Assembly: GCA_025603075.1 (NCBI GenBank)
Contig: MU626432.1
Coordinates: 1-39,735, forward strand
DNA from: Neoconidiobolus thromboides FSU 785
Lineage: Eukaryota > Fungi > Entomophthoromycota
Reading direction: 5' to 3'
DNA: 39,735 nucleotides
Both the position numbers and the translations under genes were made by a program. The notes below the pieces were generated by a model. That model worked only from the letters and a program-made list of their open reading frames with translations. It was not told the origin of the DNA and made no database searches. Shown here piece by piece: positions 12,913 through 39,380 of the stretch; the first letter of the stretch is position 1; each line of letters opens with the position of its first letter.

Positions 12913-13460
12913 TTTACTTTTTTTAATTAAAAATAGTTTTATCGAAATCTATTGATTTGATTGATTATCTGCAAAATTTAAATGGAATTTTATGCTAATT
13001 TTAATGGGAATTTAGGAATTTATTATAAGTTTAAAAATTATATAAGATTTAACATTTGAAGATGTATTTTTATATTTAAGAAATTTTACTAGTAAAATTT
13101 CTACTAAAATAGCGTTTAAAGATGAAAAAAACAATAAAGTCAAAAAAATACCCATACATTTTTTTCTACATAAAATAATAAAGCATTAAGTTTTCGTACA
13201 GTTGTCTATTAAGGATTTTATAATGTCTATTACACTGTTTTGATTTATAAATACTAGAATATGATGTAAGCACCTTCATCCTTCTTTTATAACTTAATTA
13301 TTGTTATTAGGATATATTATAGCAGAATACTAATATGTCAGTTAGACAACTGTACGTAATTTATAAGTAAATATTTGAGTACCGATCTTAAGTCAAAATA
13401 ATAACAGTTATCATAAAATAGGATTTTTTATTCGTTTCCCATAAAAGTTAGATATAGTAC

Positions 13461-17026: not shown

Positions 17027-17565
17027 TTTTTTTAATTAAAGCCTTTATAGCTATTTGTATTATTATTTCTTTAATTTAGAGTCCCATATTTACTATCCTT
17101 ATCCAATATTTATAAGCTTTAGTATATCGCACCAGTTGGATTAATATAATAACCATATAAACACTATGTTGAAATTTATTATTAGTTAATATTTATCCAA
17201 ATGTAAGTTTTAACCCTAAGAGTAGCATTTTAAGATAAAGTAAGGCTTACTATGGAATTGACCTATATATCAATACTTTAAAGTAGTAATAAAATAAATG
17301 CATTTCATACGTACTATAATACCTTTTATAATATCTTTTATACATTTTTAAGTAAATCAAGGTTAACATTTACTAGATTAAATAATTTTTTAAATCACTT
17401 TTACTAAAGATCGTGTTAAAAGGTTACTTATCAAAAAAGATATATTGAGCAACAAAATAACTTATATGAATATACCATATTTTATTCCACCAAAGTAAAT
17501 TCATATAACATTAGCAATGTTCATATTCAAAAATCATCAAATACGACTTTAAATCTTAGTTTATA

Positions 17566-17664
17566 TGGAGATGTTTTTTGTTTTCATCACTTTTTCCATT
17601 TTTTAAGCGCTATTTGAACAGAACTTTTGTTAGTAAAATTCTTAAACAAAAAAATATATATTCA
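17566..17664 (-). mobile_element. MITE copy A (~100 bp, TA-flanked)
   Basis: TA|TGGAGATGTTTTTTG...AAGCGCTATTTGA...CAAAAAAATATATATTCA|TA, homologous to the other copies. Confidence 0.8.
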
Positions 17665-18686
17665 TATATTAAAATTATGAAATATAAAATTATGGTTCTG
17701 ATAAAGTTTCAAGAAAATAGTAAGGGGGAAGGTATCTGATAAATAAGGTTTAATTTTTAAATGCAAATTTATCTTAGAGTAACTGTTCAGAAGTAGCTAT
17801 TTTAATAACCGTAAGACAGTTTCGTAGTATAAAAAACATAATAAAAAACATATAATAAATGTTCTAAACAATATAAATAACATCAAAAACTTTTTATAAT
17901 AATTACATAATAAAACATTAACTTCAAGTTATTTTCACGTTACTATCAATCTGGAATTATTACAACTTTGATCGAGTTAATATATTAATTTGTGTCAATT
18001 GGCAAAATATTAGTTGAATTTGGTATTTCATTTTTCATCCACCTGATACAAAATGCCAATACAAGCTAATAAATTCGAAGTTCCAATACTCCTTTTCCAT
18101 TCCAAAAACAGTGGATTTGAAGTTTAAAGTTATTTCATTTTTTATCAATTGAATTTGATGCAAATTACTAGCAAATAAATGTGGGGCTTACAGCTTTGCA
18201 CCTTTAAATTAATTTATCGTTGTAATGTAAAAATTTTGTGAATAATACAAAATGATTTTATATTAAATTATAAAGATATTAATAAATTAAACTATAGCTC
18301 TAATTATAAAAATCTCCTTTTATTTAATAAAATTTAAAAATAGATATTAATATTCGGAAATCAACATGATATTATGCACCATTGCAATAAAAGAAAGTAA
18401 GTTCTATTTTTAGCTGTTATTATGTAGGATTGATCACATTTAATAAATCCAATTTCCTAGTGACAACCTAAAACCAAATCGATTGGTCTATCCAGAATCG
18501 AAAATTACTTAATATAGGAAAAACAAAATAAAAATTCAAATATTAGTGATTACCAGGATCAAATGATTTAGCAACCTCTATTTGTTCCACAAATTTAAAA
18601 AGATATATAAATACTCTTAAATCCTAATCTTTAATTTTTTTACGAAAATACAATTTACAGGCAGTGCCAGTTTAAGCTAACTAAAA

Positions 18687-19738: not shown

Positions 19739-20954
19739 TTAAATTTTACCCCTAAAATTAAGATTGGAATCTATACTAGAGATACCATCAAACTGAGACT
19801 CTTTTCTTATATTAGATAAATAAATATCATCCTCTTGAGAAGAAGTAAAGTGTTGATCATCAAGTTTATTGAATGTACTTTTATTTCCTAGATGGTTACT
19901 ATCATTGTGAAGGTTGATAGGTTCTGGTATTACTTCTTTAGCTTGGTTTTTATCCTTACTATCGCTCAAATTCATAGCCCATTTAAATAGCAGTGTTACT
20001 GCTACCATTGATATCAATACCAAACACCTATTAACCAGTTAAAACAATATATAATAAAAATAATATATTGACTTACCAAAAGAATCCAAGAATATCACTT
20101 ATACAACCCATAGCAGGCACCCCAGGTTGAGAGTTTCTTAACGCAGGCAAAGCAAACAGCATAGAAACGCTAGTGCCCAAAATAGGTGGTGGGATTTCTC
20201 TATTATTAAATACTGCGTCAACAGCAATATTAATCATAGCAATAGCTAAGCACCACATCAAAACAACCATAAAAGAGCAAACTAACAAAGTGGTAGGGGG
20301 CCGTACAGCTCTTACAGCAACAATTTTTGACTCATCCAAAGTGGTATAGGTAGAAAAATAATCATTTGTTTTTTCATCTTCTGGTAAGTCATAGAAACGA
20401 ATACGAAATAATTGTGAAGTGCCATAAAAGGTGACGCTTGTAGGGACTAAAATTGGATCCCCGGATTTTGAGATGGATTTATTTTTGGTTGTTATTTCCA
20501 ATGGAAAATACGCGATGAATTCTTCTAATGGATAGTCTCTTAAGTTACCAAAGGTGAAAGGTACTGTTAATTGGAAAGGCTCAATGGAGTTTCCCCTTGG
20601 TACAGATCTACGTTTGAATCGGAAGTTGATATCAATATCATATTTGATTGTTTTATTTTCATAACTTAGGTCTCCTATTGGATCAAGTTGTATAAACAAA
20701 TCTACTTTTTTATTTAAAGGATCTACATTCATTAAATCTACTTGTATGTTTAGACTACCTCCAATTAATTCACTTTGTGTTGCTATTTGCTTATATGATC
20801 TTCCATTTGAGCCCTCGTTTGAATAAGCTACAAAGATTGGTAATACTATTACACACCATAATATAGCTCCAATAAAAAATTTAAATAGCCGTCTTCTTAC
20901 TTTATGTAGAAATACCCAATTATAGCACCTAGTTAAGGTCTTATTTTTTAACAT
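19739..20954 (-). CDS. DUF4436-family multi-pass membrane protein, paralog 1, 2 exons
   Basis: N-terminal TM, a soluble domain (PFQLTVPFTFGNLRDYPLE), then TMs with FALPALRNSQPGVPAMGCISDILGFFW. An intron after GFFW joins ORF 19739..20023 (CLVLISMVAVTLLFKWAMN..). Confidence 0.8.
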
Positions 20955-22061
20955 CTTTTTAAAGAAAATGAGCTGTGGTTAAAATTACAATAAAGATTAA
21001 TAAAAAGTAATCTACCATTTAGTTTCCTCTTTGTTTTAAACTTCAGTTATATGATGTTTTACATTTGTCAGTTCATCAGTTTGAGCTTTTATTTTTCGTT
21101 ATTCTTCTGCTAATTTTATCACCTAATAACTTTACAAATTATGATAAATTATTGGCTAAAAGTAGAAATGAGGTTGTCTTTTTTGCTTAAGGAATTCGTT
21201 AGCATTTTTTCCTCTTAATAGCACTTAAAAAGGGAATAAATAATGAAACCAAAAAACACTATCAAGTTTATTTTGTGCAATAGTACTATTTTAAGCATAG
21301 TACTAAAATGAACTAAAATTTGCCATAATAATCAAATTAGTGAATTAAAAAAAGAATACAGAAATGAACCTGACACAACTATTTTCCAAGGATATATTAT
21401 TTATAGCTTCAGAACTTTAAGTGTGTGTAAAATTTACAATAAAAGATTTATTTTTACATTTGTTGTTATATTTGAGTTAGGATTAAGTTCAAATATTAAC
21501 TATCAAAATCTTATTACTGTTTTTATTTTGTATCTTTCCTGGATTATTTTTATCCAATGACTTAAATATGAATTAACAGAAAGCGTGTAATTCAATATCA
21601 ACCCTATGGTTTCTTCGAACCTTGTTTTGAAAGTATTAAATTAGACGTTATCCCCCTTATTTATACTACTTTTAGTCTGAGCTGTTTACCATTTTATTCA
21701 CTTGATATACTCTCTCCTACCAATAAAAGTCAATAGATACATTATGAAGTTAAAAGGAGCTTTACAATATAGTAAAACTGAAGTTAACATTAAAAGTTAC
21801 TAGATTTATACATTAAAATCGTTGGTTATTTTGCTATCCTTTCAAATGTACTCATATCTTTGGTGTAAAGGGTGGCTCTGGAAAAAAGAAATTTCTAAAA
21901 TTTGGAGAACATTTTCTATCATACTTTCAAATTTGTCCGTAATTTTAAAATGCTTAAGGAATGTTAAATGATATAAGGATAAGTTTAAATGGATCAATAA
22001 TATAAATATTGTTATTAAGCCAAAATATAAAGGAATTCAACTGGACTTGACATAATAAAAA

Positions 22062-23050
22062 ATGATGCCAATAAAAGCAAACATAACCAGGTTACATAGC
22101 TGGATATTTTCCAGTAATCTTAGGAGAAGAGTCTTTAAAATATTTATAGGGATGACACTATTCTGTATCATAGTGATACCAATTTTTATAGGATATGTCA
22201 ATGAAGGAGATAAATCCAGGGTCCTGAATAATATTAAAAACTATACGGATTCAAATACAGAGGATTATATTGATTTACAGATTGACTTGGTTACTGCAGA
22301 TCCAGTCAATAAAAAAGTAGATTTATTTGTACAGTTAGACCCTATAGGAGGATATAGTTTTAAAAATAAGACGTCAAGGTATGATATTGATATCAATTTT
22401 CGATTCATACGTAAGTCTATTTTAAAGGGTGAGTTTATAGAACCCTTTCAACTAAGCTTACCCTTTGCGGAGGGAAGCTTAAGGGATTATCCTTTTGAAT
22501 TATTTTTGGTTTATTTTCCAATTGAAATCATTATCAGAAGCTCAAGCTTGAGCTCTAATGAAATAGACTTATTAGCTGCTAACACTAACATTAATTTCTA
22601 TGGTACTTCTCAGCTATTTCGTGTACGCTATGAAGAGGTATCTAACCAAGATAAAAGCAATGCCTTCTATTCTTCAGTCACTATCTTACCAAATTCAAAA
22701 TTAATTATGGTAAAATTATTGCGTCCTCCTACTACACTATTGGTTTGTACCTTTATGGTTGTTTTGATGTGGTGCTTAGCTATTGCTATGATTAATATTG
22801 CTATTGATGCTGTGTTCAATAACAGAGAAATTCCTCCTCCAATTTTAGGTACAAGCGTTGCTATGTTGTTTGCTTTGCCTGCGTTAAGAAACTCTCAACC
22901 TGGGGTGCCTGCTATGGGTTGTATAAGTGATATTCTTGGATTCTTTTGGTAAATCAATATATTATTTTTGTAGAATATTAGATATTAGCGTTAATTAATA
23001 GGAGTTTAGTTTTAATATCAATAGCAGCAGTAACATTATTGTTTAAATGA
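22062..23050 (+). CDS. DUF4436-family multi-pass membrane protein, paralog 2, 2 exons; TGA at 23048-23050, frame stays open to TAA 23252-23254
   Basis: Collinear with paralog 1, with the same intron position (GFFW|). Exon 2 reads SLVLISIAAVTLLFK* where paralog 1 has ..TLLFKW. Confidence 0.8.
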
Positions 23051-26298: not shown

Positions 26299-27513
26299 AT
26301 GGCAGAATCAAATCAATCAGCTTCTAACGATACATGGTCTAATTTAAGTGGTAAATTTGGGCCATTGGCCAGCAAAATAAGCAAGGGATTTACACAAGCC
26401 AAACAATGGAGTGAAGAGAAGTTAGGCACTGCTTCGGATGTCACTGAGTTACCTGTAGAATATCTTGAACTTGAAAAGGTAACTAAGCTAAATAAATAAA
26501 TCATCAACTATAAAATAATCTAATAAATTAAAAAGAAAGTAGACACTATAAGAAATTTGCATTTACAAATGATAAAAGTTGTCAAAAATTATTCCGCTCA
26601 GTTAGGTGATACTGTTTTACCAGAAAGCTTACAAGGATTTACAAAAAGTATTACTGAAACATTTAACGCTGGTAATGGGCCTGTAGCTCCACATGCTACT
26701 GAAAATAATGATCCTAAAACAGTATATAACGCTTTTGCTAAGACTGCATTTGAAGGTGCTGGTGTACTAGGAACTGATGAGCCTTTCGGTAATTTAAATT
26801 TAGTTTAGTTTGTTAGAATTCTGGTTAATTTTTCTAGGTACCGTTTTAATGAAATTCGGTTCGGTAGAAGATAAAATAGGTGATAGTAAGACAAGAATGG
26901 TAATAATATTAATGATAGTATTTTAAATCAATTAATCTTTTATTTATTTAAATAGAATCAAACTATTCAAAAACAAGTATTAACCCCATTAAACTCTACT
27001 TTAAATACAACTATTCAATTAGCTATGGTGAGTTAAAATATGATATCGTGGATGGTTCTTTATTAATGTTTCTTTAGAAAGCTCGTCGAAATGTAACTAA
27101 TTTAAGACTCGAGTTGGATGGGTTAAGATCCAAACATAGAAACGCTAAACCAGAAAAATTAGCTCAAGTAACTATCATAACTAACAATAACTCAAAGAAT
27201 ACAACTAACACGAAAATAGGCCAAAAAAGAAATAGATGATGCTGAAGAAGCTTTAGTACTTGCAGTAGATGAAGCAAGTGAATTAATGCGAACAGTCATT
27301 GATAATGTAAGTAATTAATATACTCATAAAAATAGTACATAATAATATTTTGACTTCTAATAGCCAGAACCACTTCGTAATTTGGCAGAGTTAGTAGCTG
27401 CTCAAATGGATTTTTACAAAGAAGCTTATGAGTTGTTAGCTGATATTGCTCCTGAAATTGATGAAATTCAAGTCACCCATGAATCCCTTTATCGTCAAAG
27501 TCAAGCAAATTAA
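26299..27513 (+). CDS. GVP36: GVP36-like BAR-domain protein, multi-exon
   Basis: KGFTQAKQWSEEKLGTASDVTELPVEYLELEK; ARRNVTNLRLELDGLRSK; AEEALVLAVDEASELMRTVIDN|PEPLRNLAELVAAQMDFYKEAYELL. Confidence 0.85.
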
Positions 27514-27759: not shown

Positions 27760-30700
27760 AATTATATTTCTTTTAAGTATCATCACACATTCGAATCGTT
27801 GATTTTGAGATTCAGTTTTGAGTTGAGCCTGAGGTTGGTTATCGATCTCTCAAATTTTAGCTTGAACGTTTAATCTTTCCAAAATTAGTACTATAAAATC
27901 TTCATTATCATCGTCATCCTTAAAATAACTTTTGTTTCTTAGGTCTTAAACTAACATCGATAGCTTGTCCTTGAACGTTTTTATCCTCAAGTTCATCACT
28001 TACCTTGTTACTCGCTTTAGCTGATAAAGTTCTTCCAACAGTAACCTGTCTATTTTCTTGATTGATAGTTTTTTTGACTGAGGGTGCATTGAGTAGTGAT
28101 GGATTGTTATAATTTTTATCTAAAACAGATAATAAATAACCTTCATTAAGTTCCCTGTTAGTGTTGCTTTTTAAATTACTTTGATCCTTATCATTTAATG
28201 CTACAGCTTCTATCAGCTTAGATGATAAAACTGAAGCCAGAGGAGAAGGTACATCATTATCAGCCTGATGATGCATATAAGGATGTTTTCTTTGGCTTCA
28301 TCAGTTTTTCCATCTTTTAAATGCTATTTGAGTGGAAAAACCATTGGTAAAATCCTTAAACGCAAAAATACATTTCCGTATCTTTGGTATCATCCTGATC
28401 ATATGAACTTATCTGGAAAACCTTAAGCTCTACCGTATTCACGTACAGTAATCACTTTATTTTGAGATAGATGAATAACAGTATCCTGTTTACCCATAGA
28501 TTGGATATCCGTTAAAGCAGTTAAGAAATGTCCTTTAAAGTCCAACCTCGCAAATAAGCCTTTCCGGCTTAAACACCATAGCTTTAATTTTTCTGATAAG
28601 GAGGAGTGATCAGAACCTGGTACCATGGAGATACGGCAGATCCTTTCCACCGTTATATCGTTAAATGATCGAGTCACATGGTTGAAATACTTCATAGCAC
28701 TTTGTCGAGAAAGTCGTTGGAATTCAGAAAATGGTTTCATAATATAATTTGTTTGCATCTTACCAATATAAACTGTATCGATTTTGATCTTTTTAAAATG
28801 ATTGATTGAGTTGTTAGTTATTTTATAGTCTGGGTAAACGATACATTATTATCGTACTCAAACCCTTCTAAATTGGCAACTACATCATAAATTGTTTGCG
28901 CTGGATGTGGTACACAATAGTCAGTAAGATTTATTGCTATATAAAAAACACTATTAGATAATGAGATATTTAATCAACCTATTTTATGGAAACGATGTGT
29001 TGGCTCTGGGTAATATGCAAGATGATTGTCTAAAATAGTACCCCAGACAATGACACGACGTCTTGATTGAGCCAAACCAAAGTTGCCAGCCTGTTGAGTT
29101 GAAATACGATATTGATAGCCCATATGAGTAAGGCATCTAAAAACGAATTTGATCTATTCCATTCTAATACCTCCTTCAATCATATTGATCTCCTTTTGAT
29201 TACCTTCTAATCTAGAATTTAACGGCTCGCGTATATTTTCTGATACAGAGTATTTTGGTCGATAGAAATCTACATAACCCATGGCAGTAGCAGTTACTGA
29301 ATTTTTAATATCATTTGCTTTTTTAAATCTATTGATATCCGAGAGTTCCTGGCAGGGTGGGCCACAATAGATCAAGATAGCTTCTCCAGGCTGTGGCATG
29401 CCTGATAATTGCCTCCCCATAAAATCTTTTGCTGAAGGAAGTCCATTCTTATCGCTTGTATTAATACCTTGATTCAATAAAAAGTTAATATGTTGATCGT
29501 ATACTGTTGTACTTGGGAAATTCTTTTTAAATGTGATAGCTGCACCTGGGTTAAATTCGATAGAATAGCTAGTATGAACAATCCACCCTTTTCCATTCCT
29601 GGTGTAAGGCTTCTATACTCTGAAAACATATTTAAAGCTACTAATGATTTACAATTATCATATAAGTCGTTTGTTTCTTTAATGTGCTTCAGTCTGTACT
29701 CATTACATAATTGACAACATTCAAGTTCTTTCTTACTAACGTTGATTATACTTCCGTTCTCATCTTCACCACTTTTAATGTAAAAGGTACTATCTTCCGA
29801 CTTATAGCTATCTAAATTTTTAACATCCTCGATATACTTGAGATAACAAGCACCCTCTAGTTTATCTATAGCCATAATGGAATGTTTACTAATTTGATAT
29901 ATATCTTGGATCTGGTATAAACTTCCTTGGTCCATAACTAGAATTTAAGGCCACAAAGTCAATCGTTTTTTCAAATCTTTTATAACGTCTTAAATGAAAT
30001 TTGATAGTCTTATCTAATAATTTTCCCCAGAGCTTGTCCCTATTATTATTTTTATTGAACGGTACTATTTGAGTAGTGACATAATAAGTTTTTCTTTCTT
30101 TTGGTAAAACACAAACAAAATTATAAGAATGATATTCAAAGGACCTATGTTTCATACTACTTGTATTCTTATCAATCTCGCTTGGATTTAACTTATTGCA
30201 ATAAAGCTTAGACTCCCAACTCTTAGAAATAGACAGCTTGGTATCAATAAAAGCTCTGGTAGCAATCTCATAAAAATATCTGAAAAAGAAAGAGTCAATA
30301 AACTTGGTCTCATCTTCTTTTATTGTCATATGGCTCACTTTAGTCTTTGCAACAAATTGATTCAAGGAATAAGTTTCAATATAATCCGTAAAGAATAATT
30401 CATTTTGCTAAACTAGCTCTCCCATAATAGCTTCATTACTTAGCACAAAAGCGCGTCATAAAGCTTTTTAGTTTTGTTTGCTTCAAATAAAATACATACA
30501 TACAATACGATTTGGTCGGTTTTTAGCATCTTTTACAATGATAAAATCCCTACTTTTATGCTGTCATTTTTACTTTTGCTTATGAAAATAAATCAATCTT
30601 TGGAAATGATTGTATTTTTCTTCCAGCCCATTCGGATATACTTATAGTTGGTTTTCCGTACACTAACTGATAGTGTAGCTTTTCTCTAACTTCTTTTAAT

Positions 30701-31640
30701 TGATTTTCTTTTGCTTCCTCAACAGGTTCATGATTAATAAGACCATACGCTAACTTTGAAATAATTTTGGTAAAAATTGGAGGAATTGTTTTATCCTTTA
30801 TCAATAAACTTTGCTTACCAACACTTCTATGGACTCTGAGTTCCTTTTGGTAAGGTAATTCGAATTTATCATCTTGTATTTCCATCAACCTGGTAAAGGA
30901 TAGGATAGTAAAAAATCCATACTTACTGTTTTCTTGCATCTAGATCACAATCTCTTCTTCGATGTAAGCTATTAGTCTTAAAAAAGCTTTTATATTTATT
31001 TTCATTATTGTGCAGCTTGGAAATGGGGGACAAGCTTTCGACGATTCTGGAAATACTCAAAGGAACTCTTCGTATACTAAGTTTGGGTTTTTAGGCATAT
31101 CATTGATAACAAGATCAATTAATCGAGTTCTCATCAAATAATCTCTATATTTAGAATAACATTCTGGATTTGGATTACTGAGTTTATACCAAACATAGGT
31201 GGTATTTAGGAAAAGTTCACTGTTTATTGATTAATTTTCTAGATAAAACTGAAATCAATTACCTTGATTCATATAGTATAAATGCCATCTCCCAATCAAA
31301 GATAAAACCAAGTCTCACAGATTGATTAGGGAAATTTCCTTCGTCTAACAAAGTCTTTTCTTTATCTGCTTCCACTTGATCGTTATCAATGTCATTACCA
31401 TCGTCTTCACTCTTAAGGATAACTTGACTGCTTTCCTCATCTTTTGAAGCTTTTACAATACCAATACCAAGGATCTTTCTGTTCTCGTTATCAATCTCAT
31501 CCAAACTGGTATAATATTATTGTTTAAAGCGTCATAAAAAATAAAGTCTTTTAGGATTCGAACGGTAAAAGGTTTCCATCCTTGTTTGGTGTATTACCTC
31601 CCTTTTTGTCTTTATTCAAAGAAACAATTCTTGTTGATCT
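27760..31640 (-). pseudogene. DNMT1: DNMT1-type (Dnmt1/Masc2-like) cytosine-5 DNA methyltransferase pseudogene with RFTS, BAH1, BAH2 and MTase domains
   Basis: RFTS: LP.RILKDFIFYD..FIFDWE..TTYVWYKLSNP. BAH1: MGEL..NELFFTD..NQFVAKTKV..SFFFRYFYE. Degenerate motif I ALNMFSEYRSLTPGMEKGG; motif IV CGPPCQ; VI YRPKY..ENI; VIII QAGNFGLAQSRRRVI; TRD GLFARLDFKGHFLT..MGKQDTVIHLSQNKVITVREYGRA*GFPD; motif X HQADNDVPSPLA. In-frame stops (e.g. 31057-59, 29154-56, 28423-25), several frameshifts, a MITE insertion, and retained introns (31220-31262, 28937-28978). Ends are approximate. Confidence 0.93.
28278..28378 (-). mobile_element. MITE copy B inserted in the DNMT1 catalytic domain with a TA target-site duplication
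   Basis: ATGCA TA [TAAGGATG...CATTTCCG] TA TCTTTGG. Removing the element and one TA restores minus-strand AAA GAT ATG CAT (K-D-M-H). Confidence 0.9.
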
Positions 31641-33564: not shown

Positions 33565-34026
33565 TGTGAAACATCGCCTTATCAGCTCTATGATTGACTA
33601 CAATATAATAATCACTTAAATTGATGTGTTCTCAAGTTCAGCTATAACTAATCCCAAGCCTTTTACTTCCACTTATTATTAGAATTTCTAACTTCATTGC
33701 AAAGAATATCATCCTCTCGTTTTGATATCTATACTTGTTGGGGTATAAAAGAGATTTTAGAACATAATAGCTCGAGGCTTTTTAATTAAACTACTCATTG
33801 ATATTGTACCTTTAATATAGCGGCTAAATCTTTCTGATAGTATTTTACGTAGAATTTACAGTAATATTGTTTATTCTATTTATCTTACATAGTTCGTAAC
33901 TTATTGTATGGCATTTTTCATAATTCAAGTCTATCTTAGTCACATAAACTAAGACCTTTCGACTTACAACTAGTTAATCAACCAAAAACTGCTTTTGACT
34001 CCAATCACTGAATACCAGATTTCACA
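33565..34026 (+). mobile_element. Solo-LTR-like repeat copy 1 (~460 bp)
   Basis: Termini TGTGAAA...TTTCACA (TG..CA with a short inverted repeat); TATAAAAG at ~33744 is conserved in all 3 copies. No TSD or PBS seen. Confidence 0.7.
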
Positions 34027-34494
34027 AAACTAATCTTAGCTTATTTTATAAAGATAGCTGAAGGTTTAAAGTTTTGATACTTATTAAATAAGTAAAGAAA
34101 TGGTTTATTAAATATTGTGAATTAATTATTAAAGATTAATATTACTTAAGTTGTTAATATCTAAGTTAATAAATAGTCAAAAAACAAGTAGTTATAACAA
34201 TAAATAAAAGCTACTACTATATTGCTTATATCATATAAAGATAGCTAATTACAGTTTAAGACTAACCACTCCCTCCCATGCAGCTATTTACTAACTTAAT
34301 AATATATTAATAATATAACTATAGCATTAAAATAACTTATTCATTTAATAGCGAATTTGCAATATTAGCTATGAAGCAGTCAATAATAAATATTTCTCAA
34401 TAAAGCTTTATAAAAATACATATTAAAATAGTTTGAAACTTTGGGTACTTTTGCTTTCTAGTAAAGAATTTATTTTTATAGAATTTCAAGCAAA

Positions 34495-34571
34495 GAATCT
34501 TGCTAAGAATTTTCCCACTCAAATAGCGCTTAAAAAATGGAAAGGTAATGAAATCAAAAAAAACATCCCCA
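34495..34571 (+). mobile_element. MITE copy C (left end degenerate)
   Basis: CCACTCAAATAGCGCTTAAAAAATGGAAAGGTAATGAAATCAAAAAAAACATCCCCA. Confidence 0.75.
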
Positions 34572-35031
34572 AATGTTAAAAGCTGAATCTTAGTTTCATA
34601 TTAAATTTTCTTGGTATCAAAATAATTTAAAAATAAATAAATTTTTTATATTATTATGAGTTATGGGAGAACTTTATTAAGGTTCAACTTCAATCATTCT
34701 ATTATGAATCCCTAAAATTGTTCTAATCAAATATTACTGCTGTATTTATATTCTAATGTAGGTCGAGATTGTTTTGAGTATGTATTAGATTTTTTCAAAC
34801 TGCCTCATCTTTCTTTTATTCTTTTAGTAATTCACTAGAGCTTTTTTCAAAAGTTTACTAACATTTATTTTACAAGAACTAGATCAAAATTTTTGTTATT
34901 TTAGTCAACTAAGCTACTAGAATCTATTCTCGACTAAATTAAACCGAATCCCATAATAAACCTCATTACATAACAAAGCTCGAAAACTAAAAAAATTAGA
35001 TTATTCATATTTACTAAATTTAATATAAAAA

Positions 35032-36360
35032 ATGACTAAAGATACTTTTTTAATAAATTATAACGAAGAAGAAATCCAAAATCATTTAAAAGTGGCCTTA
35101 GATCAATTAATAAAGCCATTAAACCAACGTGAAAATAATGGTTTAATAAGAAAACTAACACTTGCCACTACTTTGATAAGCAGTAAAGAAGACAACTATA
35201 TTGATTTTTCTTCCAACGATTACCTTAGTTTATCTGAAAAGGGCTCACCATTACAGTCTGAGATAAAGAAGCAATTCAATAACAGCGACAATAACATAAC
35301 GAGTGGTTCAACAGGCTCAAGGCTATTAGATGGAAATTACAAAGAAATCGAACAGCTTGAAGAGTTAGCTAGTAGATTTCATTCTTCTTCTTCAGCTTTG
35401 TTGTTCAATTCTGGTTTCGATGCCAATGTTTCATTGTTTTCAACTATAGCAACCAAAGAAAGTACTATTATCTATGATCAACTTATACATGCTTCAATTC
35501 ATGATGGCTTAAAACTGTCAAAATGTCAACATAAGTTAGCTTTTAAGCATAATGATTTATCTCATCTTGAAGTTATATTAACAAAAACAAGAAAATTACA
35601 TAATAATAATATATATATTGCTGTAGAAAGTGTATACTCTATGGATGGTGATAAAGCAGATATAAAAAAATTAGTTTCATTATGTTTAAAATACAAAGCA
35701 CAATTAATTATTGATGAAGCACATGCCACAGGTATTTATGGAAAAAATGGGGAAGGTTTAACAAATGAAGCATTGAACAATGATTACAACTTGATCAATA
35801 ATTTAATATTGGCAAGGATAATCACATATGGTAAATCATTTTGTAATCATGGTGCTGTTATCTTATGTAATTCAATTTTAAAACAGTACTTGATCAACTA
35901 TGCTCGCCCATTAATATATTCTACTTTTTTACCACCAATTACCTGTTTAACAATTCAATGTGCTTATAAAGTGATTATGGATCAACAAATCGGTGGTAAG
36001 TTAAGACAGAATTTATTAGCTATTATTAATGAATTTAAACAACTCTCTTATGAATTATTACCTCACCATTTACTGACTCCTTCGACTACTCAAATTCAAG
36101 CTGTTTTAGCGCCTGGCAATTTTTTTGCTTTAAAATTGACTCATCATTTACAATCCAAAGGTTATTTGGTACGTGCTATCCGTTATCCTACTGTACCTAA
36201 AGGTCAAGAGAGGATACGCATCTGTTTGAGAGCTAGTCATAATAAGGAGCAGTTGAGAAGTTTTTTAAATGAAGTTTTGACTTTCATTCAATTGAAGAGA
36301 CCTACTTTATTATCATCAATCAATGATGGCCATTCTAAAGATCCAAGCTCTAAGTTATAA
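35032..36360 (+). CDS. bioF: 8-amino-7-oxononanoate (KAPA) synthase, PLP-dependent, intronless, with C-terminal peroxisomal PTS1 (SKL)
   Basis: IDFSSNDYLSL, GSTGSRLLDGN, LFNSGFDAN, DQLIHASIHDG, FKHND, VESVYSMDGD, IIDEAHATG, TYGKSF (PLP Lys), RPLIYST, AIRYPTVPKGQERIRI; the protein ends ..DPSSKL*. Confidence 0.93.
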   Translation: MTKDTFLINYNEEEIQNHLKVALDQLIKPLNQRENNGLIRKLTLATTLISSKEDNYIDFSSNDYLSLSEKGSPLQSEIKKQFNNSDNNITSGSTGSRLLDGNYKEIEQLEELASRFHSSSSALLFNSGFDANVSLFSTIATKESTIIYDQLIHASIHDGLKLSKCQHKLAFKHNDLSHLEVILTKTRKLHNNNIYIAVESVYSMDGDKADIKKLVSLCLKYKAQLIIDEAHATGIYGKNGEGLTNEALNNDYNLINNLILARIITYGKSFCNHGAVILCNSILKQYLINYARPLIYSTFLPPITCLTIQCAYKVIMDQQIGGKLRQNLLAIINEFKQLSYELLPHHLLTPSTTQIQAVLAPGNFFALKLTHHLQSKGYLVRAIRYPTVPKGQERIRICLRASHNKEQLRSFLNEVLTFIQLKRPTLLSSINDGHSKDPSSKL

Positions 36361-37141
36361 ATAAAATTTTATAATATTATAGTATTATTAATTTAAAAAT
36401 ATAGAATATTTAAATATCAATGGTATTTTATACTTTTGTATTATATAATTAGTATAATTAGTCCTTTTACAAAAAACATCTGTTTTTGCAAGGAAAATTT
36501 AGAAGTATAGAATAACACAACAGTAAAAAAAATTATGCCGCAATCAATAATCATTCTATTTCTAACAAGAGCTAGCGTCAGTTATGGGAAAACTCGATAT
36601 TGATGTTTTAAAAACCATTACTATACTCTTGTGTTGGTCTTTTTATCCCATTTATATTATAATGATTTTTAAATATTTAAATATAATACTACTGTGTCTG
36701 ACCTAAAATTATATACACTTACCCATATATAGTGAATACAATTTAATTTTATGATGTTTGCCAAATTTTGACTTTATTATTGAAATTTACTAATTTGCCT
36801 TATTAGTAAAAGAAACTAATATAATAAAGCTGCCAATCATATGAATACTTTAATATTTGTATAGTAAAGATAAACAAAAAGGCAATTAAAGGCACTTAGT
36901 CTCTTTTGTAATAAATAAAGGGTAAGTGAGGTTTTGGAGATCGTTTTTGAAAAACCATAAAGGAACTAAAAATGAAGAATAAAAAAATATAAACAATCAA
37001 TACAGTTTTATTTAAAGTCGACTATAAAATGAAACTGTAGTTTGTTTTCGTTAAAATGTTATAAATTAATAAAATTATTAACATTATGATAGTAGCAGAT
37101 GTCAAAATAATTTGCCAAAAGTTCCTTCAAAATTTAATATA

Positions 37142-37239
37142 TAGGAATGTGTTTTTGTATTTAAGAATTTTACTAACAATTTTTCCACTCAAATAGCGCT
37201 TAAAAGATGGAAAAGTAATGAAGTCAAAAAAACATCTTG
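37142..37239 (+). mobile_element. MITE copy D
   Basis: TA|TAGGAATGTGTTTTTG...CCACTCAAATAGCGCTTAAAAGATGG...AAAAAACATCTTG|TA. Confidence 0.85.
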
Positions 37240-37426
37240 TATGCAATTTTAAGAGAAATAAATAAAAATATTATAATAAAAAATATATATAAGGTTAAAA
37301 ATTAAAAATTGATTTATTCATAATGTTACTAATACTATTGATGTATTAATTAAGGTTATAAAAAATGATTAAAAAGCAAAATATATAATAGATTTTTTAA
37401 TAATTTTTTAATAATTTTCTAATACA

Positions 37427-37522
37427 TGGGAGTATTTTTTTACTTCACTTTTTCTATCTTTTAAGCGCTATTTGAGTGGAAAAATTCTTAGTAAGATTCT
37501 TAAACACAAAAACACATTCACA
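37427..37522 (-). mobile_element. MITE copy E
   Basis: TGGGAGTATTTTTTT...AAGCGCTATTTGAGTGG...CAAAAACACATTCACA|TA. Confidence 0.8.
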
Positions 37523-37560
37523 TATATACAATTTAATACTTTGGAGTTAAAATTAAAATA

Positions 37561-37658
37561 TAGAGATGTATTTCTGTTTTTAAGAGTTTTACTAAGAATT
37601 TTTTCGCTCAAATAGAACTTGAAAGATGGAAGCGATGAAGTCAAAAAAAACATTGTCA
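37561..37658 (+). mobile_element. MITE copy F, abutting LTR-like copy 2
   Basis: TA|TAGAGATGTATTTCTG...CGCTCAAATAGAACTTGAAAGATGG...AAAAAAACATTGTCA|T, followed immediately by TGTGAAA. Confidence 0.75.
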
Positions 37659-37659
37659 T

Positions 37660-38122
37660 TGTGAAATCTGGTATTCAGTGATTGGAGTCAAAAATAGCTA
37701 TTTGTTGGTTGAATATACTGTAAGTCGAAAGGTCTTAGTTTATGTGACTAAGATAGTCTTGAATTATGAAAAATGCCATACAATAAGTTACGAACTATGT
37801 AAGATAAATAGAATAAACAATATTACTGTAAATTCTACGTAAAATACTATCAGAAAGATTTAGCCGCTATATTAAAGGTACAATATCAATGAGTAGTTTA
37901 ATTAAAAAGCCTCGAGTTATTATGTTCTAAAATCTCTTTTATACCCCAACAAGTATAGATATCAAAACGAGAGGATGATATTCTTTGCAATGAAGTTAGA
38001 AATTCTAATAATAAGTTGAAGTAAAAGGTTTGGGATTGACTGTGTCTGAACTTGAGAACACAATGACTTAAGTAATTGTTACGTTATAGTTAATTATAGA
38101 GCTGACAAAGCGATATTTCACG
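37660..38122 (-). mobile_element. Solo-LTR-like repeat copy 2, inverted relative to copy 1
   Basis: Reverse complement of 33565-34026; termini TGTGAAATC...ATTTCACG. Confidence 0.75.
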
Positions 38123-38380
38123 AAATCTAATTTAAATAATTATTATAAAGTTTATAATTTTAGTTGGAGCTATATCAGATTTTTTAAATTTACTAGACAC
38201 TAGCTAATAATATAACTTATTACTATATTTAATAAAATATAAACGTTTTTTAATATTCTATATTTTTATTACTTTTTTTATATCTTTGTTTTTTATTACT
38301 GATAGTTAAATTGTTGATTTTATTATTTTATTATTTTATTATTTTTTGAATACAAAACATCAAACTTTAACACTGGTATA

Positions 38381-38480
38381 AGGGGATGTTTTTTTGGCTT
38401 TGTTATTTTTTACATCTTTTAAGCGCTATTTAAATGGAAAAGTTATTAGTAAAATTCTCAAATACAAAAACACATCTCCA
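38381..38480 (-). mobile_element. MITE copy G
   Basis: TA|AGGGGATGTTTTTTTGG...AAGCGCTATTTAAATGG...CAAAAACACATCTCCA|TA. Confidence 0.85.
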
Positions 38481-38837
38481 TAACTTGTTTATTATAATAG
38501 TCTAACTTTATTAAATCTGATTTTGTATTTATGTTTATATTTTATCTAACTTAAAATTGTTATGTAACTTTTATTACTTGATTTTTTAATAACTTTATTA
38601 AACATGCTTTTTTAAGTATCAATATAAAATTTATGTAATCTATAACTTTTTTTATCAAAAAAGTTTTTTATCTCTGCTTCATTTTTTATTGTTGTATTTT
38701 TTTAAACGATTTTTTTTAATTACATGCTGAGTATGTATATTACATAAATCTGCTTCTCTTGCTGTATTTTTAAAATCAATTGGTATATATATAGTATTGA
38801 CCTAACTACTGTTTTACCTTTTAAATTATTAAAATAT

Positions 38838-38935
38838 TTGGGATGTATTTTTGCGTTTAAAAATCTTATTAACAATCTTTCCACTCAAATAGTGCTTGAA
38901 AGATAGAAAAAGTGATGAAGTTGAAAACGCCTTCA
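38838..38935 (+). mobile_element. MITE copy H
   Basis: TTGGGATGTATTTTTGCG...CCACTCAAATAGTGCTTGAAAGATAG...GAAAACGCCTTCA|TA. Confidence 0.8.
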
Positions 38936-39151
38936 TATGATAACTGGAGGGTTTTTTATGTTCTTAATAACAGGTTAAAGTATTAATATTTTGTTATTAT
39001 TAATTGTTTTTAAATAATGATATTTGTTTTCATTTATATTAAATCCAAAACCTTTACATTTATCGAAAATACATATTAAAACTATAATTGATGATGATGC
39101 TATTTATTGATTTTTATTCAGCTTAAGCTTTTTTAAATTTATCTAGTTATA

Positions 39152-39251
39152 TGGGGATGTGTTTTTTTGCTTAATAATTTTACTAAAAAATTTTTCACTC
39201 GAATAGTACTTAAAAAATGTAAAAAGTTATGAAACCAAAAAAACAGCCCCA
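39152..39251 (+). mobile_element. MITE copy I, with the best-preserved TIRs
   Basis: TA|TGGGGATGTGTTTTTTTG...CCAAAAAAACAGCCCCA|TA: imperfect TIRs of ~17-18 bp with TA on both sides. Confidence 0.9.
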
Positions 39252-39380
39252 TATATCAAAAACTTAAAAATTTAAGAATTTGAAATTTAGATTAATTTAA
39301 ACATCTCTAGATAGGATTTTAAGTAGAAGAGAATATCTGTAATTTTCTTATGAAATATAACAATGATTTAGATTAGATTT

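What the first reader, a model, noticed from the sequence alone, without database searches (positions are those of the whole stretch)
27760..31640. Fossil of a full-length DNMT1-type methyltransferase at the border of a repeat-rich zone
Seen: all DNMT1 modules (RFTS, two BAH, MTase motifs I/IV/VI/VIII/TRD/X) are present in order, with two introns retained, but with at least ten stops or frameshifts. It is therefore a decayed genomic copy and not a retrocopy. Established: DNMT1-class enzymes methylate CG in repeats for genome defence, and 5mC machinery is patchily lost in fungi, including early-diverging lineages that instead rely on 6mA. Inference: this could be a snapshot of a lineage losing 5mC-based TE silencing, if no intact paralog exists.
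Basis: partly seen in the sequence, partly recalled or inferred. Interest (0 to 1): 0.75.

Follow-up and report, generated by a model that had tools for sequence, protein, structure and literature searches.

The report
Dead DNMT1 DNA-methylase gene in fungus
This is the decayed remains of the only DNMT1-type DNA cytosine methyltransferase gene in this fungal genome (named Neoconidiobolus thromboides in earlier scan notes); no working DNA cytosine methylase was found in the assembly, so the lineage has probably given up copying CG methylation, which is a known kind of evolutionary loss.

Summary
On the minus strand, from about 31584 to 27923, lies a full-length DNMT1 gene that reads colinearly with the intact DNMT1 of Entomophthora muscae (aa 8-1121) and Massospora cicadina. 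The order is RFTS, two BAH domains, then C5-methyltransferase motifs I, IV, VI, VIII, the target-recognition domain (TRD), IX and X.

It is dead. It carries 10 in-frame stops (all three stop codons), 6 frameshifts and a 108-bp MITE (a short non-autonomous transposon) inserted between motifs IX and X. Key catalytic residues are also replaced. One 43-nt GT..AG intron is retained, so it is a decayed gene left in place and not a retrocopy. I found one intron, not two.

A tree places it as the vertical ortholog, sister to E. muscae, on a branch about 4 times longer.

Genome-wide, the only other C5-methyltransferase loci are two DNMT2 (tRNA) genes and a second, older relic on contig C60. All four SRA (UHRF1-like) loci also contain stops.

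The "losing 5mC maintenance" reading is therefore supported at the level of gene content. Actual 5mC and 6mA levels are untested.

The scan had already reached this conclusion from other DNA: reports on the UHRF1 relics (s1-062757) state that the only DNMT1-type gene is broken. This is an ordinary pseudogene. It could be useful as a natural comparison with relatives that keep DNMT1.

The parts
27923..31584 (-). Whole DNMT1 unitary pseudogene (the detectable part; the low-complexity N-terminus upstream of 31584 was not recognisable)
   Evidence: Colinear tblastn chains to E. muscae P0151 and Massospora P0186; own-genome hits
30940..31584 (-). RFTS / DNMT1-RFD domain. It starts at VRILKDFIFYD (31563-31531), has a frameshift near 31508 and stops at 31059 (TGA) and 30942 (TAG)
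   Evidence: PF12047 19.8 bits, just under the cut-off of 22; 55-67% identity to the RFD start of several DNMT1s; 34-40% over aa 54-364 of orthologs
31220..31262 (-). Retained 43-nt intron (GTAATT...AACAG). Splicing gives FDWEMAFILYES-S-ELFLNTTYVWYKL, the same length as the E. muscae segment
   Evidence: Sequence read, compared with the alignment; neighbouring genes show similarly short gaps between exon ORFs
29770..30557 (-). BAH1 and BAH2. Stops at 30485, 30470, 30458 and 30410; frameshift near 29904
   Evidence: 41.9% identity to aa 319-537 of P0151, which Pfam annotates as two BAH stretches; sub-threshold PF01426 hits of 17.7-19.4 bits
28118..29640 (-). C5-methyltransferase catalytic domain. 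Motif I 29629-29594 (FSGCGG changed to FSEYRS); IV 29363-29340 (GPPCQGFS changed to GPPCQELS); VI 29243-29226; VIII 29093-29052; TRD 28845-28525; IX 28452-28426; X 28276-28238 (QVGNAVP changed to QADNDVP). Stops at 29156, 28976 and 28425; frameshifts near 29582, 28847 and 28405
   Evidence: PF00145; PDB DNMT1 top hits; 61.6% and 56.5% identity to P0151; motif coordinates
28274..28381 (+). 108-bp MITE inserted exactly between codons ..TKD and MHHQ.. (between motifs IX and X). The flanks fit a TA target-site duplication; short terminal inverted repeats
   Evidence: Family with 2438 first-look candidates in the genome; consensus and TIRs from 48 copies; boundaries and flanking codons; 85% identical to the family consensus

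Best explanation
This is the unitary pseudogene of the lineage's vertically inherited DNMT1, the maintenance CG cytosine-5 DNA methyltransferase. It is a decayed gene left in place with one intron retained; same-position synteny with relatives was not tested. Selection on it was lost after the split from the Entomophthora/Massospora lineage. Since then it has collected ordinary neutral damage: AT-biased point substitutions including 10 nonsense codons, 6 small indels, and one insertion of a high-copy MITE with TA flanks. It cannot encode an enzyme. The SAM-binding motif I, the catalytic loop after PCQ, and motif X are all altered, and no reading frame longer than 172 codons survives. The rest of the assembly holds only DNMT2 tRNA methylases, a second dead methylase relic and broken UHRF1-like reader genes. 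The inference is that the DNMT1-UHRF1 maintenance pathway as a whole has been lost in this fungus. Shown: the identity, orthology and lesions of the relic, and the absence of an intact DNA C5-methyltransferase in the assembly. Inferred: absence of 5mC, and the order and cause of the loss.
For: The full-length colinear alignment to intact E. muscae and Massospora DNMT1 carries 10 in-frame stops and 6 frame changes. All nearest relatives carry RFD + 2 BAH + DNA_methylase. The maximum-likelihood tree puts the relic sister to E. muscae (SH-aLRT 100), then C. coronatus (99), inside a Zoopagomycota clade; its terminal branch is 1.24 against 0.33 for E. muscae. It departs from the consensus at 17 of 55 columns that are at least 90% conserved in 51 DNMT1 relatives (31%, the highest of all rows; E. 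muscae 5.5%, C. coronatus 7.3%). The retained intron is shown. The MITE insertion falls precisely between two codons. The stops use all three stop codons, so no variant genetic code explains them. Long intact ORFs of 649, 627, 460 and 442 aa in the same window argue against poor local assembly. Own-genome searches with PF00145, PF12047 and P0151 find no intact DNMT1, Dim-2, DNMT5, RID or DNMT3; the two other loci are DNMT2 by their PDB best hits. SRA loci contain stops.
Against: No read-level data were available to confirm the indels, and some lie next to short homopolymers. The assembly is fragmented (799 contigs), so an unassembled intact copy cannot be formally excluded. No methylation or RNA data were available. 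A 117-aa gene call (P0001) exists on the motif I-VI piece, so a fragment may be transcribed or at least predicted. CpG-decay tests for past methylation were inconclusive.
Confidence: 0.9

Rival explanations
1. A dead duplicate: an intact DNMT1 (or another DNA C5-methyltransferase) exists in the organism but is missing from, or was missed in, this 24.6-Mb, 799-contig assembly, so 5mC maintenance continues.
For: Assembly completeness is unknown (header). The six-frame searches score only the best candidates.
Against: All 4 PF00145 candidates were scored and none is an intact DNA methylase. PF12047 and the P0151 protein search find nothing else except a worse relic. The tree places the relic as the ortholog, not as a lineage-specific extra copy. 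The independent UHRF1-like partner loci also contain stops.
Confidence: 0.06
2. The gene is functional, and the apparent lesions are assembly or sequencing errors, many short introns, or non-standard decoding.
For: One frame change did turn out to be a real 43-nt intron. A few frameshifts sit near A/T or G runs.
Against: The ten stops align residue-for-residue with sense codons of the orthologs, so they are not in introns. They use TGA, TAG and TAA alike. The other frame changes leave no spare nucleotides for an intron. Near-invariant catalytic residues are replaced. A transposon with its flanking duplication interrupts the coding sequence. Neighbouring genes are open.
Confidence: 0.02
3. The gene was killed by a directed hypermutation process (RIP-like, or deamination of methylated CpG) and not by passive neutral decay. 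This is the idea of the scan's note s1-275548.
For: G>A and C>T account for 30 of 50 inferable single-step changes at formerly conserved codons. Motif I lost four Gly/Cys codons by G>A changes.
Against: The two strands are equal: G>A at 17 of 120 G sites and C>T at 13 of 81 C sites. No dinucleotide context dominates: CpG accounts for 2 of 17 G>A and 0 of 13 C>T, and CpA/TpG for under half. MITE copies show the same GC-to-AT bias, 11% against 4.6%. The genome is 28% GC. Several stops arose by transversions. The locus is single-copy, whereas RIP needs repeats.
Confidence: 0.04

Closest known systems
Fungal DNMT1 (DNMT1/Masc2 clade): Entomophthora muscae KAJ9070173.1, Massospora cicadina L0F63_007074, Conidiobolus coronatus KXN74494.1
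   Same: Same domain order (RFD, 2 BAH, C5-methyltransferase with a DNMT1-type TRD). Colinear over about 1100 residues. 62% identity in the catalytic core to E. muscae. Groups as the ortholog in the tree.
   Different: Those genes are open and keep motifs I, IV and X. This one has 10 stops, 6 frameshifts, a MITE insertion and replaced catalytic residues.
Inactivated dim2 of Zymoseptoria tritici (PMC8016269) and other documented lineage-specific losses of fungal 5mC enzymes
   Same: A recognisable relic of the main DNA cytosine methyltransferase is left in a genome that otherwise lacks a working one. In both cases it marks a fairly recent loss of 5mC.
   Different: Z. tritici dim2 was amplified and then killed by RIP (abstract of PMC8016269). 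Here the locus is single-copy, is DNMT1 and not Dim-2, shows no RIP-type context, and the UHRF1-like partners are broken too.
Co-loss of DNMT1 and UHRF1 in animals such as braconid wasps (PMC9915587)
   Same: DNMT1 and the SRA-domain reader that recruits it disappear together, as that paper's co-evolution analysis predicts.
   Different: In those animals the genes are simply absent. Here both are still visible as pseudogenes, and the host is an early-diverging fungus.
Mammalian DNMT1 (PDB 3pt9, 3av4, 4wxx)
   Same: Best solved-structure matches for both the motif I-VI piece and the TRD/motif IX piece.
   Different: No CXXC domain was detected, as in fungal DNMT1s generally. About 35-40% identity. 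Non-functional.

Membership tests
DNMT1 (maintenance C5 DNA methyltransferase), by descent | N-terminal replication-foci targeting domain (Pfam DNMT1-RFD, PF12047) | tested here: met
   PF12047 19.8 bits (cut-off 22), and the only hit in the genome. The RFD start VRILKDFIFYD matches several DNMT1s at 55-67%. Colinear with the Pfam-annotated RFD of P0151 and P0186. Met by alignment; the profile score alone is just under threshold because of decay.
DNMT1 (maintenance C5 DNA methyltransferase), by descent | Two BAH domains between the RFD and the catalytic domain | tested here: met
   41.9% identity over aa 319-537 of P0151, which covers its two BAH stretches. Pfam BAH is sub-threshold on single pieces, 17.7-19.4 bits.
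DNMT1 (maintenance C5 DNA methyltransferase), by descent | C-terminal C5-methyltransferase with motifs I, IV, VI, VIII, IX, X in order and a large DNMT1-type TRD | tested here: met
   PF00145 46.9 bits. PDB best hits are all DNMT1, for both the motif I-VI piece and the TRD piece. Motif coordinates.
DNMT1 (maintenance C5 DNA methyltransferase), by descent | Groups with DNMT1 orthologs of related fungi in a tree | tested here: met
   Sister to E. muscae DNMT1 (SH-aLRT 100), then C. coronatus (99), within a Zoopagomycota clade (95). This is the quick IQ-TREE search; the careful search did not finish.
DNMT1, as a working enzyme | Continuous reading frame with intact SAM-binding motif I, catalytic PCQ loop and motif X | tested here: not met
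   10 stops, 6 frameshifts and a MITE insertion. Motif I FSGCGG became FSEYRS, motif IV GFS became ELS, motif X QVGNAVP became QADNDVP. 31% of conserved columns are replaced.
Processed pseudogene (retrocopy) | Lacks the parent gene's introns; poly(A) tail; a parent copy elsewhere | tested here: not met
   A 43-nt GT..AG intron is retained at 31262-31220. There is no parent copy in the genome.
Dim-2 / RID / DNMT5 / DNMT2 | Dim-2 and RID lack the RFD; DNMT5 has an SNF2 ATPase; DNMT2 is about 350 aa with a PPCQPFTR motif | tested here: not met
   An RFD is present. All nearest relatives are RFD-bearing DNMT1s. The genome's DNMT2-type loci are separate genes on C208 and C40.
TA-flanked MITE (Tc1/mariner-associated type), for the insert at 28274-28381 | Short (about 100 bp), non-coding, terminal inverted repeats, TA target-site duplication, high copy number | tested here: met
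   108 bp; TIR TGGGGATGT/ACATCCCCA in a 48-copy consensus; 2438 first-look candidates. At this site the flanks fit a duplicated TA between codons D and M. An autonomous partner was not sought.

The most novel reading that the evidence does not exclude
This genome preserves the whole CG-methylation maintenance module mid-decay: DNMT1, four UHRF1-like readers and a second methylase, all as readable pseudogenes. Sister lineages (Entomophthora, Massospora, C. coronatus) keep DNMT1. The order of gene deaths, and the consequences for its very abundant MITEs and for 6mA use, could therefore be reconstructed. One possibility is that the MITE burst followed, or even caused, the loss of 5mC silencing.
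Probability: 0.3. Interest if true: 0.55.

Novelty: new member of a known kind. Interest (0 to 1): 0.35.

Why it matters
Loss of cytosine methylation is common in fungi, but it is usually seen only as gene absence. Here the relic proves that the ancestor had DNMT1. It dates the loss to after the split from the Entomophthora/Massospora lineage. Together with the broken UHRF1-like genes, it points to decay of the whole pathway and not of a single gene. This gives a natural comparison (this fungus against C. coronatus and E. muscae) for asking what happens to transposons, CpG content and 6mA after 5mC maintenance is lost. It is not a new kind of biology.

Tried and rejected
1. Alternative genetic code: rejected, because all three stop codons occur.
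2. Introns as the cause of all frame changes: only one junction (31262-31220) has spare nucleotides and GT..AG ends. The others are contiguous in both protein and DNA.
3. CpG hypermutability in 48 MITE copies as a footprint of past 5mC: inconclusive. The consensus has a single CpG. Its transition frequency of 17-23% lies within the range of non-CpG C/G sites (mean 11%, maximum 35%).
4. CpG observed/expected in the window: about 0.6 in genes, spacers and the relic alike, so uninformative.
5. RIP-like or strand-biased hypermutation: not supported.
6. The C60 relic as a recent duplicate of this gene: rejected, with 30% aa identity and no nucleotide similarity apart from MITEs.
7. PDB search with the BAH piece: no hit.
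8. The bacterial promoter/terminator scan is irrelevant for a eukaryote and showed no excess.
10. The word search with P0151 returned only one relative (Massospora), because the candidate list was saturated.
11. Literature: no paper in the held library reports DNMT status or methylation for this species.
A read-through with X at every break was used only inside scripts for alignment, tree and counts.
13. The large profile-free search was used because single pieces cannot reach full-length relatives in the length-windowed word search.
Full report
**What is there**

The window is AT-rich (28% GC) and is contig C175 of a 24.6-Mb, 799-contig assembly. Earlier notes of this scan name the organism Neoconidiobolus (Conidiobolus) thromboides. 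I did not verify the name directly. The tree below and the closest relatives (Entomophthora, Massospora, Conidiobolus coronatus) fit it.

Six-frame reading of 27.4-31.9 kb shows no long ORF. On the minus strand there is instead a chain of short open pieces carrying unmistakable C5-methyltransferase motifs. Pfam finds DNA_methylase on two pieces and a weak BAH on a third. The motif I-VI piece and the TRD/motif IX piece both have DNMT1 structures as their best and nearly only PDB matches (E=3e-12 and 1e-8).

**Getting intact relatives**

Single pieces cannot reach full-length relatives in the length-windowed word search. I therefore used the one profile-free search, with the 152-aa piece 29612-29157.

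- The best hit (100% identity, 117 aa) is a gene call on the window itself (P0001).
- The next hits are Entomophthora muscae (63% identity; its full-length cluster mate is P0151, 1234 aa, KAJ9070173.1) and Conidiobolus coronatus (P0153, KXN74494.1).
- After these come Dimargaris, Dispira, Coemansia, Apophysomyces, Diversispora and Podila.
- All seven proteins tested carry DNMT1-RFD + two BAH + DNA_methylase.
- A word search with P0151 added Massospora cicadina DNMT1 (P0186, 1290 aa, same three domains).

**Anatomy and lesions**

tblastn of P0151 against the window gives one colinear chain, aa 8-1121 over 31507..28118, in seven pieces that hop between frames. P0186 gives the same chain. The RFTS domain begins further upstream at 31563 (VRILKDFIFYD), in another frame.

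Identity is 30-43% in the N-terminal half and 56-62% in the catalytic domain.

In-frame stops align to sense codons of the ortholog at 31059, 30942, 30582, 30485, 30470, 30458, 30410, 29156, 28976 and 28425. They comprise four TGA, three TAG and three TAA, so a variant genetic code is excluded.

Frame changes with no spare nucleotides lie near 31508, 30570, 29904, 29582, 28847 and 28405.

One junction is different. Between 31263 and 31219 there are 43 extra bases that begin GTAATT and end AACAG. Removing them restores the frame and gives exactly the ortholog's length. This is a retained intron, and short gaps of this size separate exon ORFs in neighbouring genes. I found no second intron in the aligned part.

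Between motif IX and motif X, codons ..TKD and MHHQ.. are separated by a 108-bp element at 28274-28381.

- Its family has 2438 first-look candidates genome-wide.
- A 48-copy alignment gives a consensus with short terminal inverted repeats.
- The flanks at this site fit a TA duplication.
- There are 11 copies in this window, six of them in 37.1-39.3 kb.

Catalytic residues are altered:

| Motif | Ortholog | This locus |
|---|---|---|
| I | FSGCGG | FSEYRS |
| IV | GPPCQGFS | GPPCQELS |
| VI | ENVRG | ENIRE |
| X | QVGNAVPP | QADNDVPS |

These changes are shown.

**Evidence for relaxed constraint and orthology**

I aligned the relic, read through with X at every break (in scripts only), with 51 full-length DNMT1 relatives. 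The relic departs from the consensus at 17 of 55 columns that are at least 90% conserved. That is 31%, the highest of all rows; E. muscae has 5.5% and C. coronatus 7.3%.

A quick IQ-TREE run (the careful search did not finish) places the relic sister to E. muscae (SH-aLRT 100). C. coronatus comes next (99), and all sit within a Zoopagomycota clade (95). The relic's terminal branch is 1.24, against 0.33 for E. muscae. The locus is therefore the vertically inherited ortholog, decayed after that split.

**How it decayed**

At formerly conserved codons the inferable single-step changes are 17 G>A, 13 C>T, 8 A>G, 5 T>C and 7 transversions.

- The rates are equal on the two strands (14% of G sites, 16% of C sites).
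- No CpG or CpA context dominates.
- MITE copies show the same GC-to-AT bias.

This is ordinary AT-biased neutral decay, not RIP-like or strand-specific hypermutation.

A uniform model converts 9 stops over about 186 stop-target site-equivalents into roughly 0.05 substitutions per site. The replacement level at conserved sites suggests somewhat more, so constraint may have been relaxed before the first disabling lesion (noted as unexplained).

**Is there an intact paralog?**

- PF00145 over the whole assembly gives four matches: this locus, one on C208 and two on C40.
- The C208 and C40 genes have the PPCQP(F/Y)TR motif, and their best PDB hits are DNMT2/tRNA(Asp) C38 methyltransferases.
- PF12047 hits only this locus.
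- Searching with intact P0151 adds one more place, C60:84799-85188. There, traces of motifs I, IV, VI, VIII, the TRD and X run over about 1.7 kb with at least six stops.
- That C60 relic is only about 30% identical to the window's relic and shares no DNA similarity with it apart from MITEs. It is a distinct and older fossil. It may be the locus whose tail is described in s1-269093.

No intact DNA cytosine methyltransferase was found.

**Partner genes**

All four SAD_SRA loci of the genome contain stops. On C12 and C44 the pieces read PHD, SRA and RING in broken frames with MITE fragments inside. On C12 a stop sits four codons before a conserved SRA strand, where no intron can explain it.

Earlier follow-up reports of this scan examined these UHRF1-like relics in detail. 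They had already stated that the only DNMT1-type gene is broken (s1-062757, s1-275459, s1-255131). My check of them is only partial. Published co-evolution analysis shows that DNMT1 and UHRF1 are gained and lost together (PMC9915587).

Two MT-A70 loci and one zf-4CXXC_R1 locus are open. I did not establish whether the MT-A70 genes write DNA 6mA.

**Surroundings**

- Downstream, on the plus strand, exon-sized ORFs of another gene end at 27513. One of them looks BAR-domain-like by eye, which I did not test.
- Upstream there are about 2 kb without recognisable genes.
- Next comes a MITE-rich stretch, in which 403-nt inverted repeats (94% complementary) bracket an intact class I/II aminotransferase ORF.

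So 'border of a repeat-rich zone' is roughly right, but the zone is not gene-free.

**Limits**

- No reads, RNA or methylation data were available.
- The CpG-based tests for past methylation were inconclusive.
- No paper in the held library addresses DNMTs or methylation in this species.

**Verdict**

This is a real, well-preserved but thoroughly dead DNMT1 ortholog. The phenomenon, lineage-specific loss of 5mC machinery in fungi, is well known. The scan had already reached the same conclusion from the UHRF1 side. Interest is moderate to low.

Noticed in passing
G000:C60 ~83,826-85,532, minus strand (L024:4826-6532): A second, more decayed C5 DNA-methyltransferase catalytic relic. It shows traces of motifs I, IV (TPCQSYS), VI, VIII (NHGTYQNRNRLFIW), the TRD and X, with at least 6 stops. 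It is about 30% identical to the window's DNMT1 relic and is not a recent duplicate. It may extend the 'tail only' relic of note s1-269093.
   Followed up: partly
G000:C126:59430-59991; C44:16006-16365; C12:138830-139159; C3:151077-151501 (L025-L028): All four SAD_SRA (UHRF1-like) loci of the genome carry stops. C12 and C44 read PHD-SRA-RING in broken frames with MITE pieces inside.
   Followed up: partly
G000:C208 (L005:7082-7660, minus) and G000:C40 (L006:7322-7546, minus): Two separate, apparently open DNMT2/TRDMT1 (tRNA C38 methyltransferase) genes. These are the only C5-methyltransferase loci in the assembly without stops inside the match.
   Followed up: partly
window 13061-13148, 17563-17667, 21168-21259, 28274-28381, 34493-34575, 37139-39254 (six copies): A 108-bp MITE family with short terminal inverted repeats and TA flanks. 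There are more than 2400 first-look candidates in a 24.6-Mb genome. Copies often sit as inverted pairs.
   Followed up: partly
window 33566-33968 and 37719-38121: 403-nt inverted repeats, 94% complementary, bracket an intact class I/II aminotransferase ORF (35032-36360).
   Followed up: no
window 20073-20954 (-) and 22062-22952 (+): Head-to-head DUF4436 paralogs whose ends share a 285-nt inverted repeat (85%).
   Followed up: no
window 29582-29232 (-): A 117-aa gene call (P0001, source NCBI contig) sits on the motif I-VI piece of the dead gene and begins with Ile, not Met. It is a fragmentary model on a pseudogene.
   Followed up: no
G000:C236:2906-3477 (+), C204:21362-21538 (+), C257:9314-9517 (-): MT-A70 family loci (two) and one zf-4CXXC_R1 locus have open frames. 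Whether the MT-A70 genes are DNA 6mA writers was not examined.
   Followed up: no
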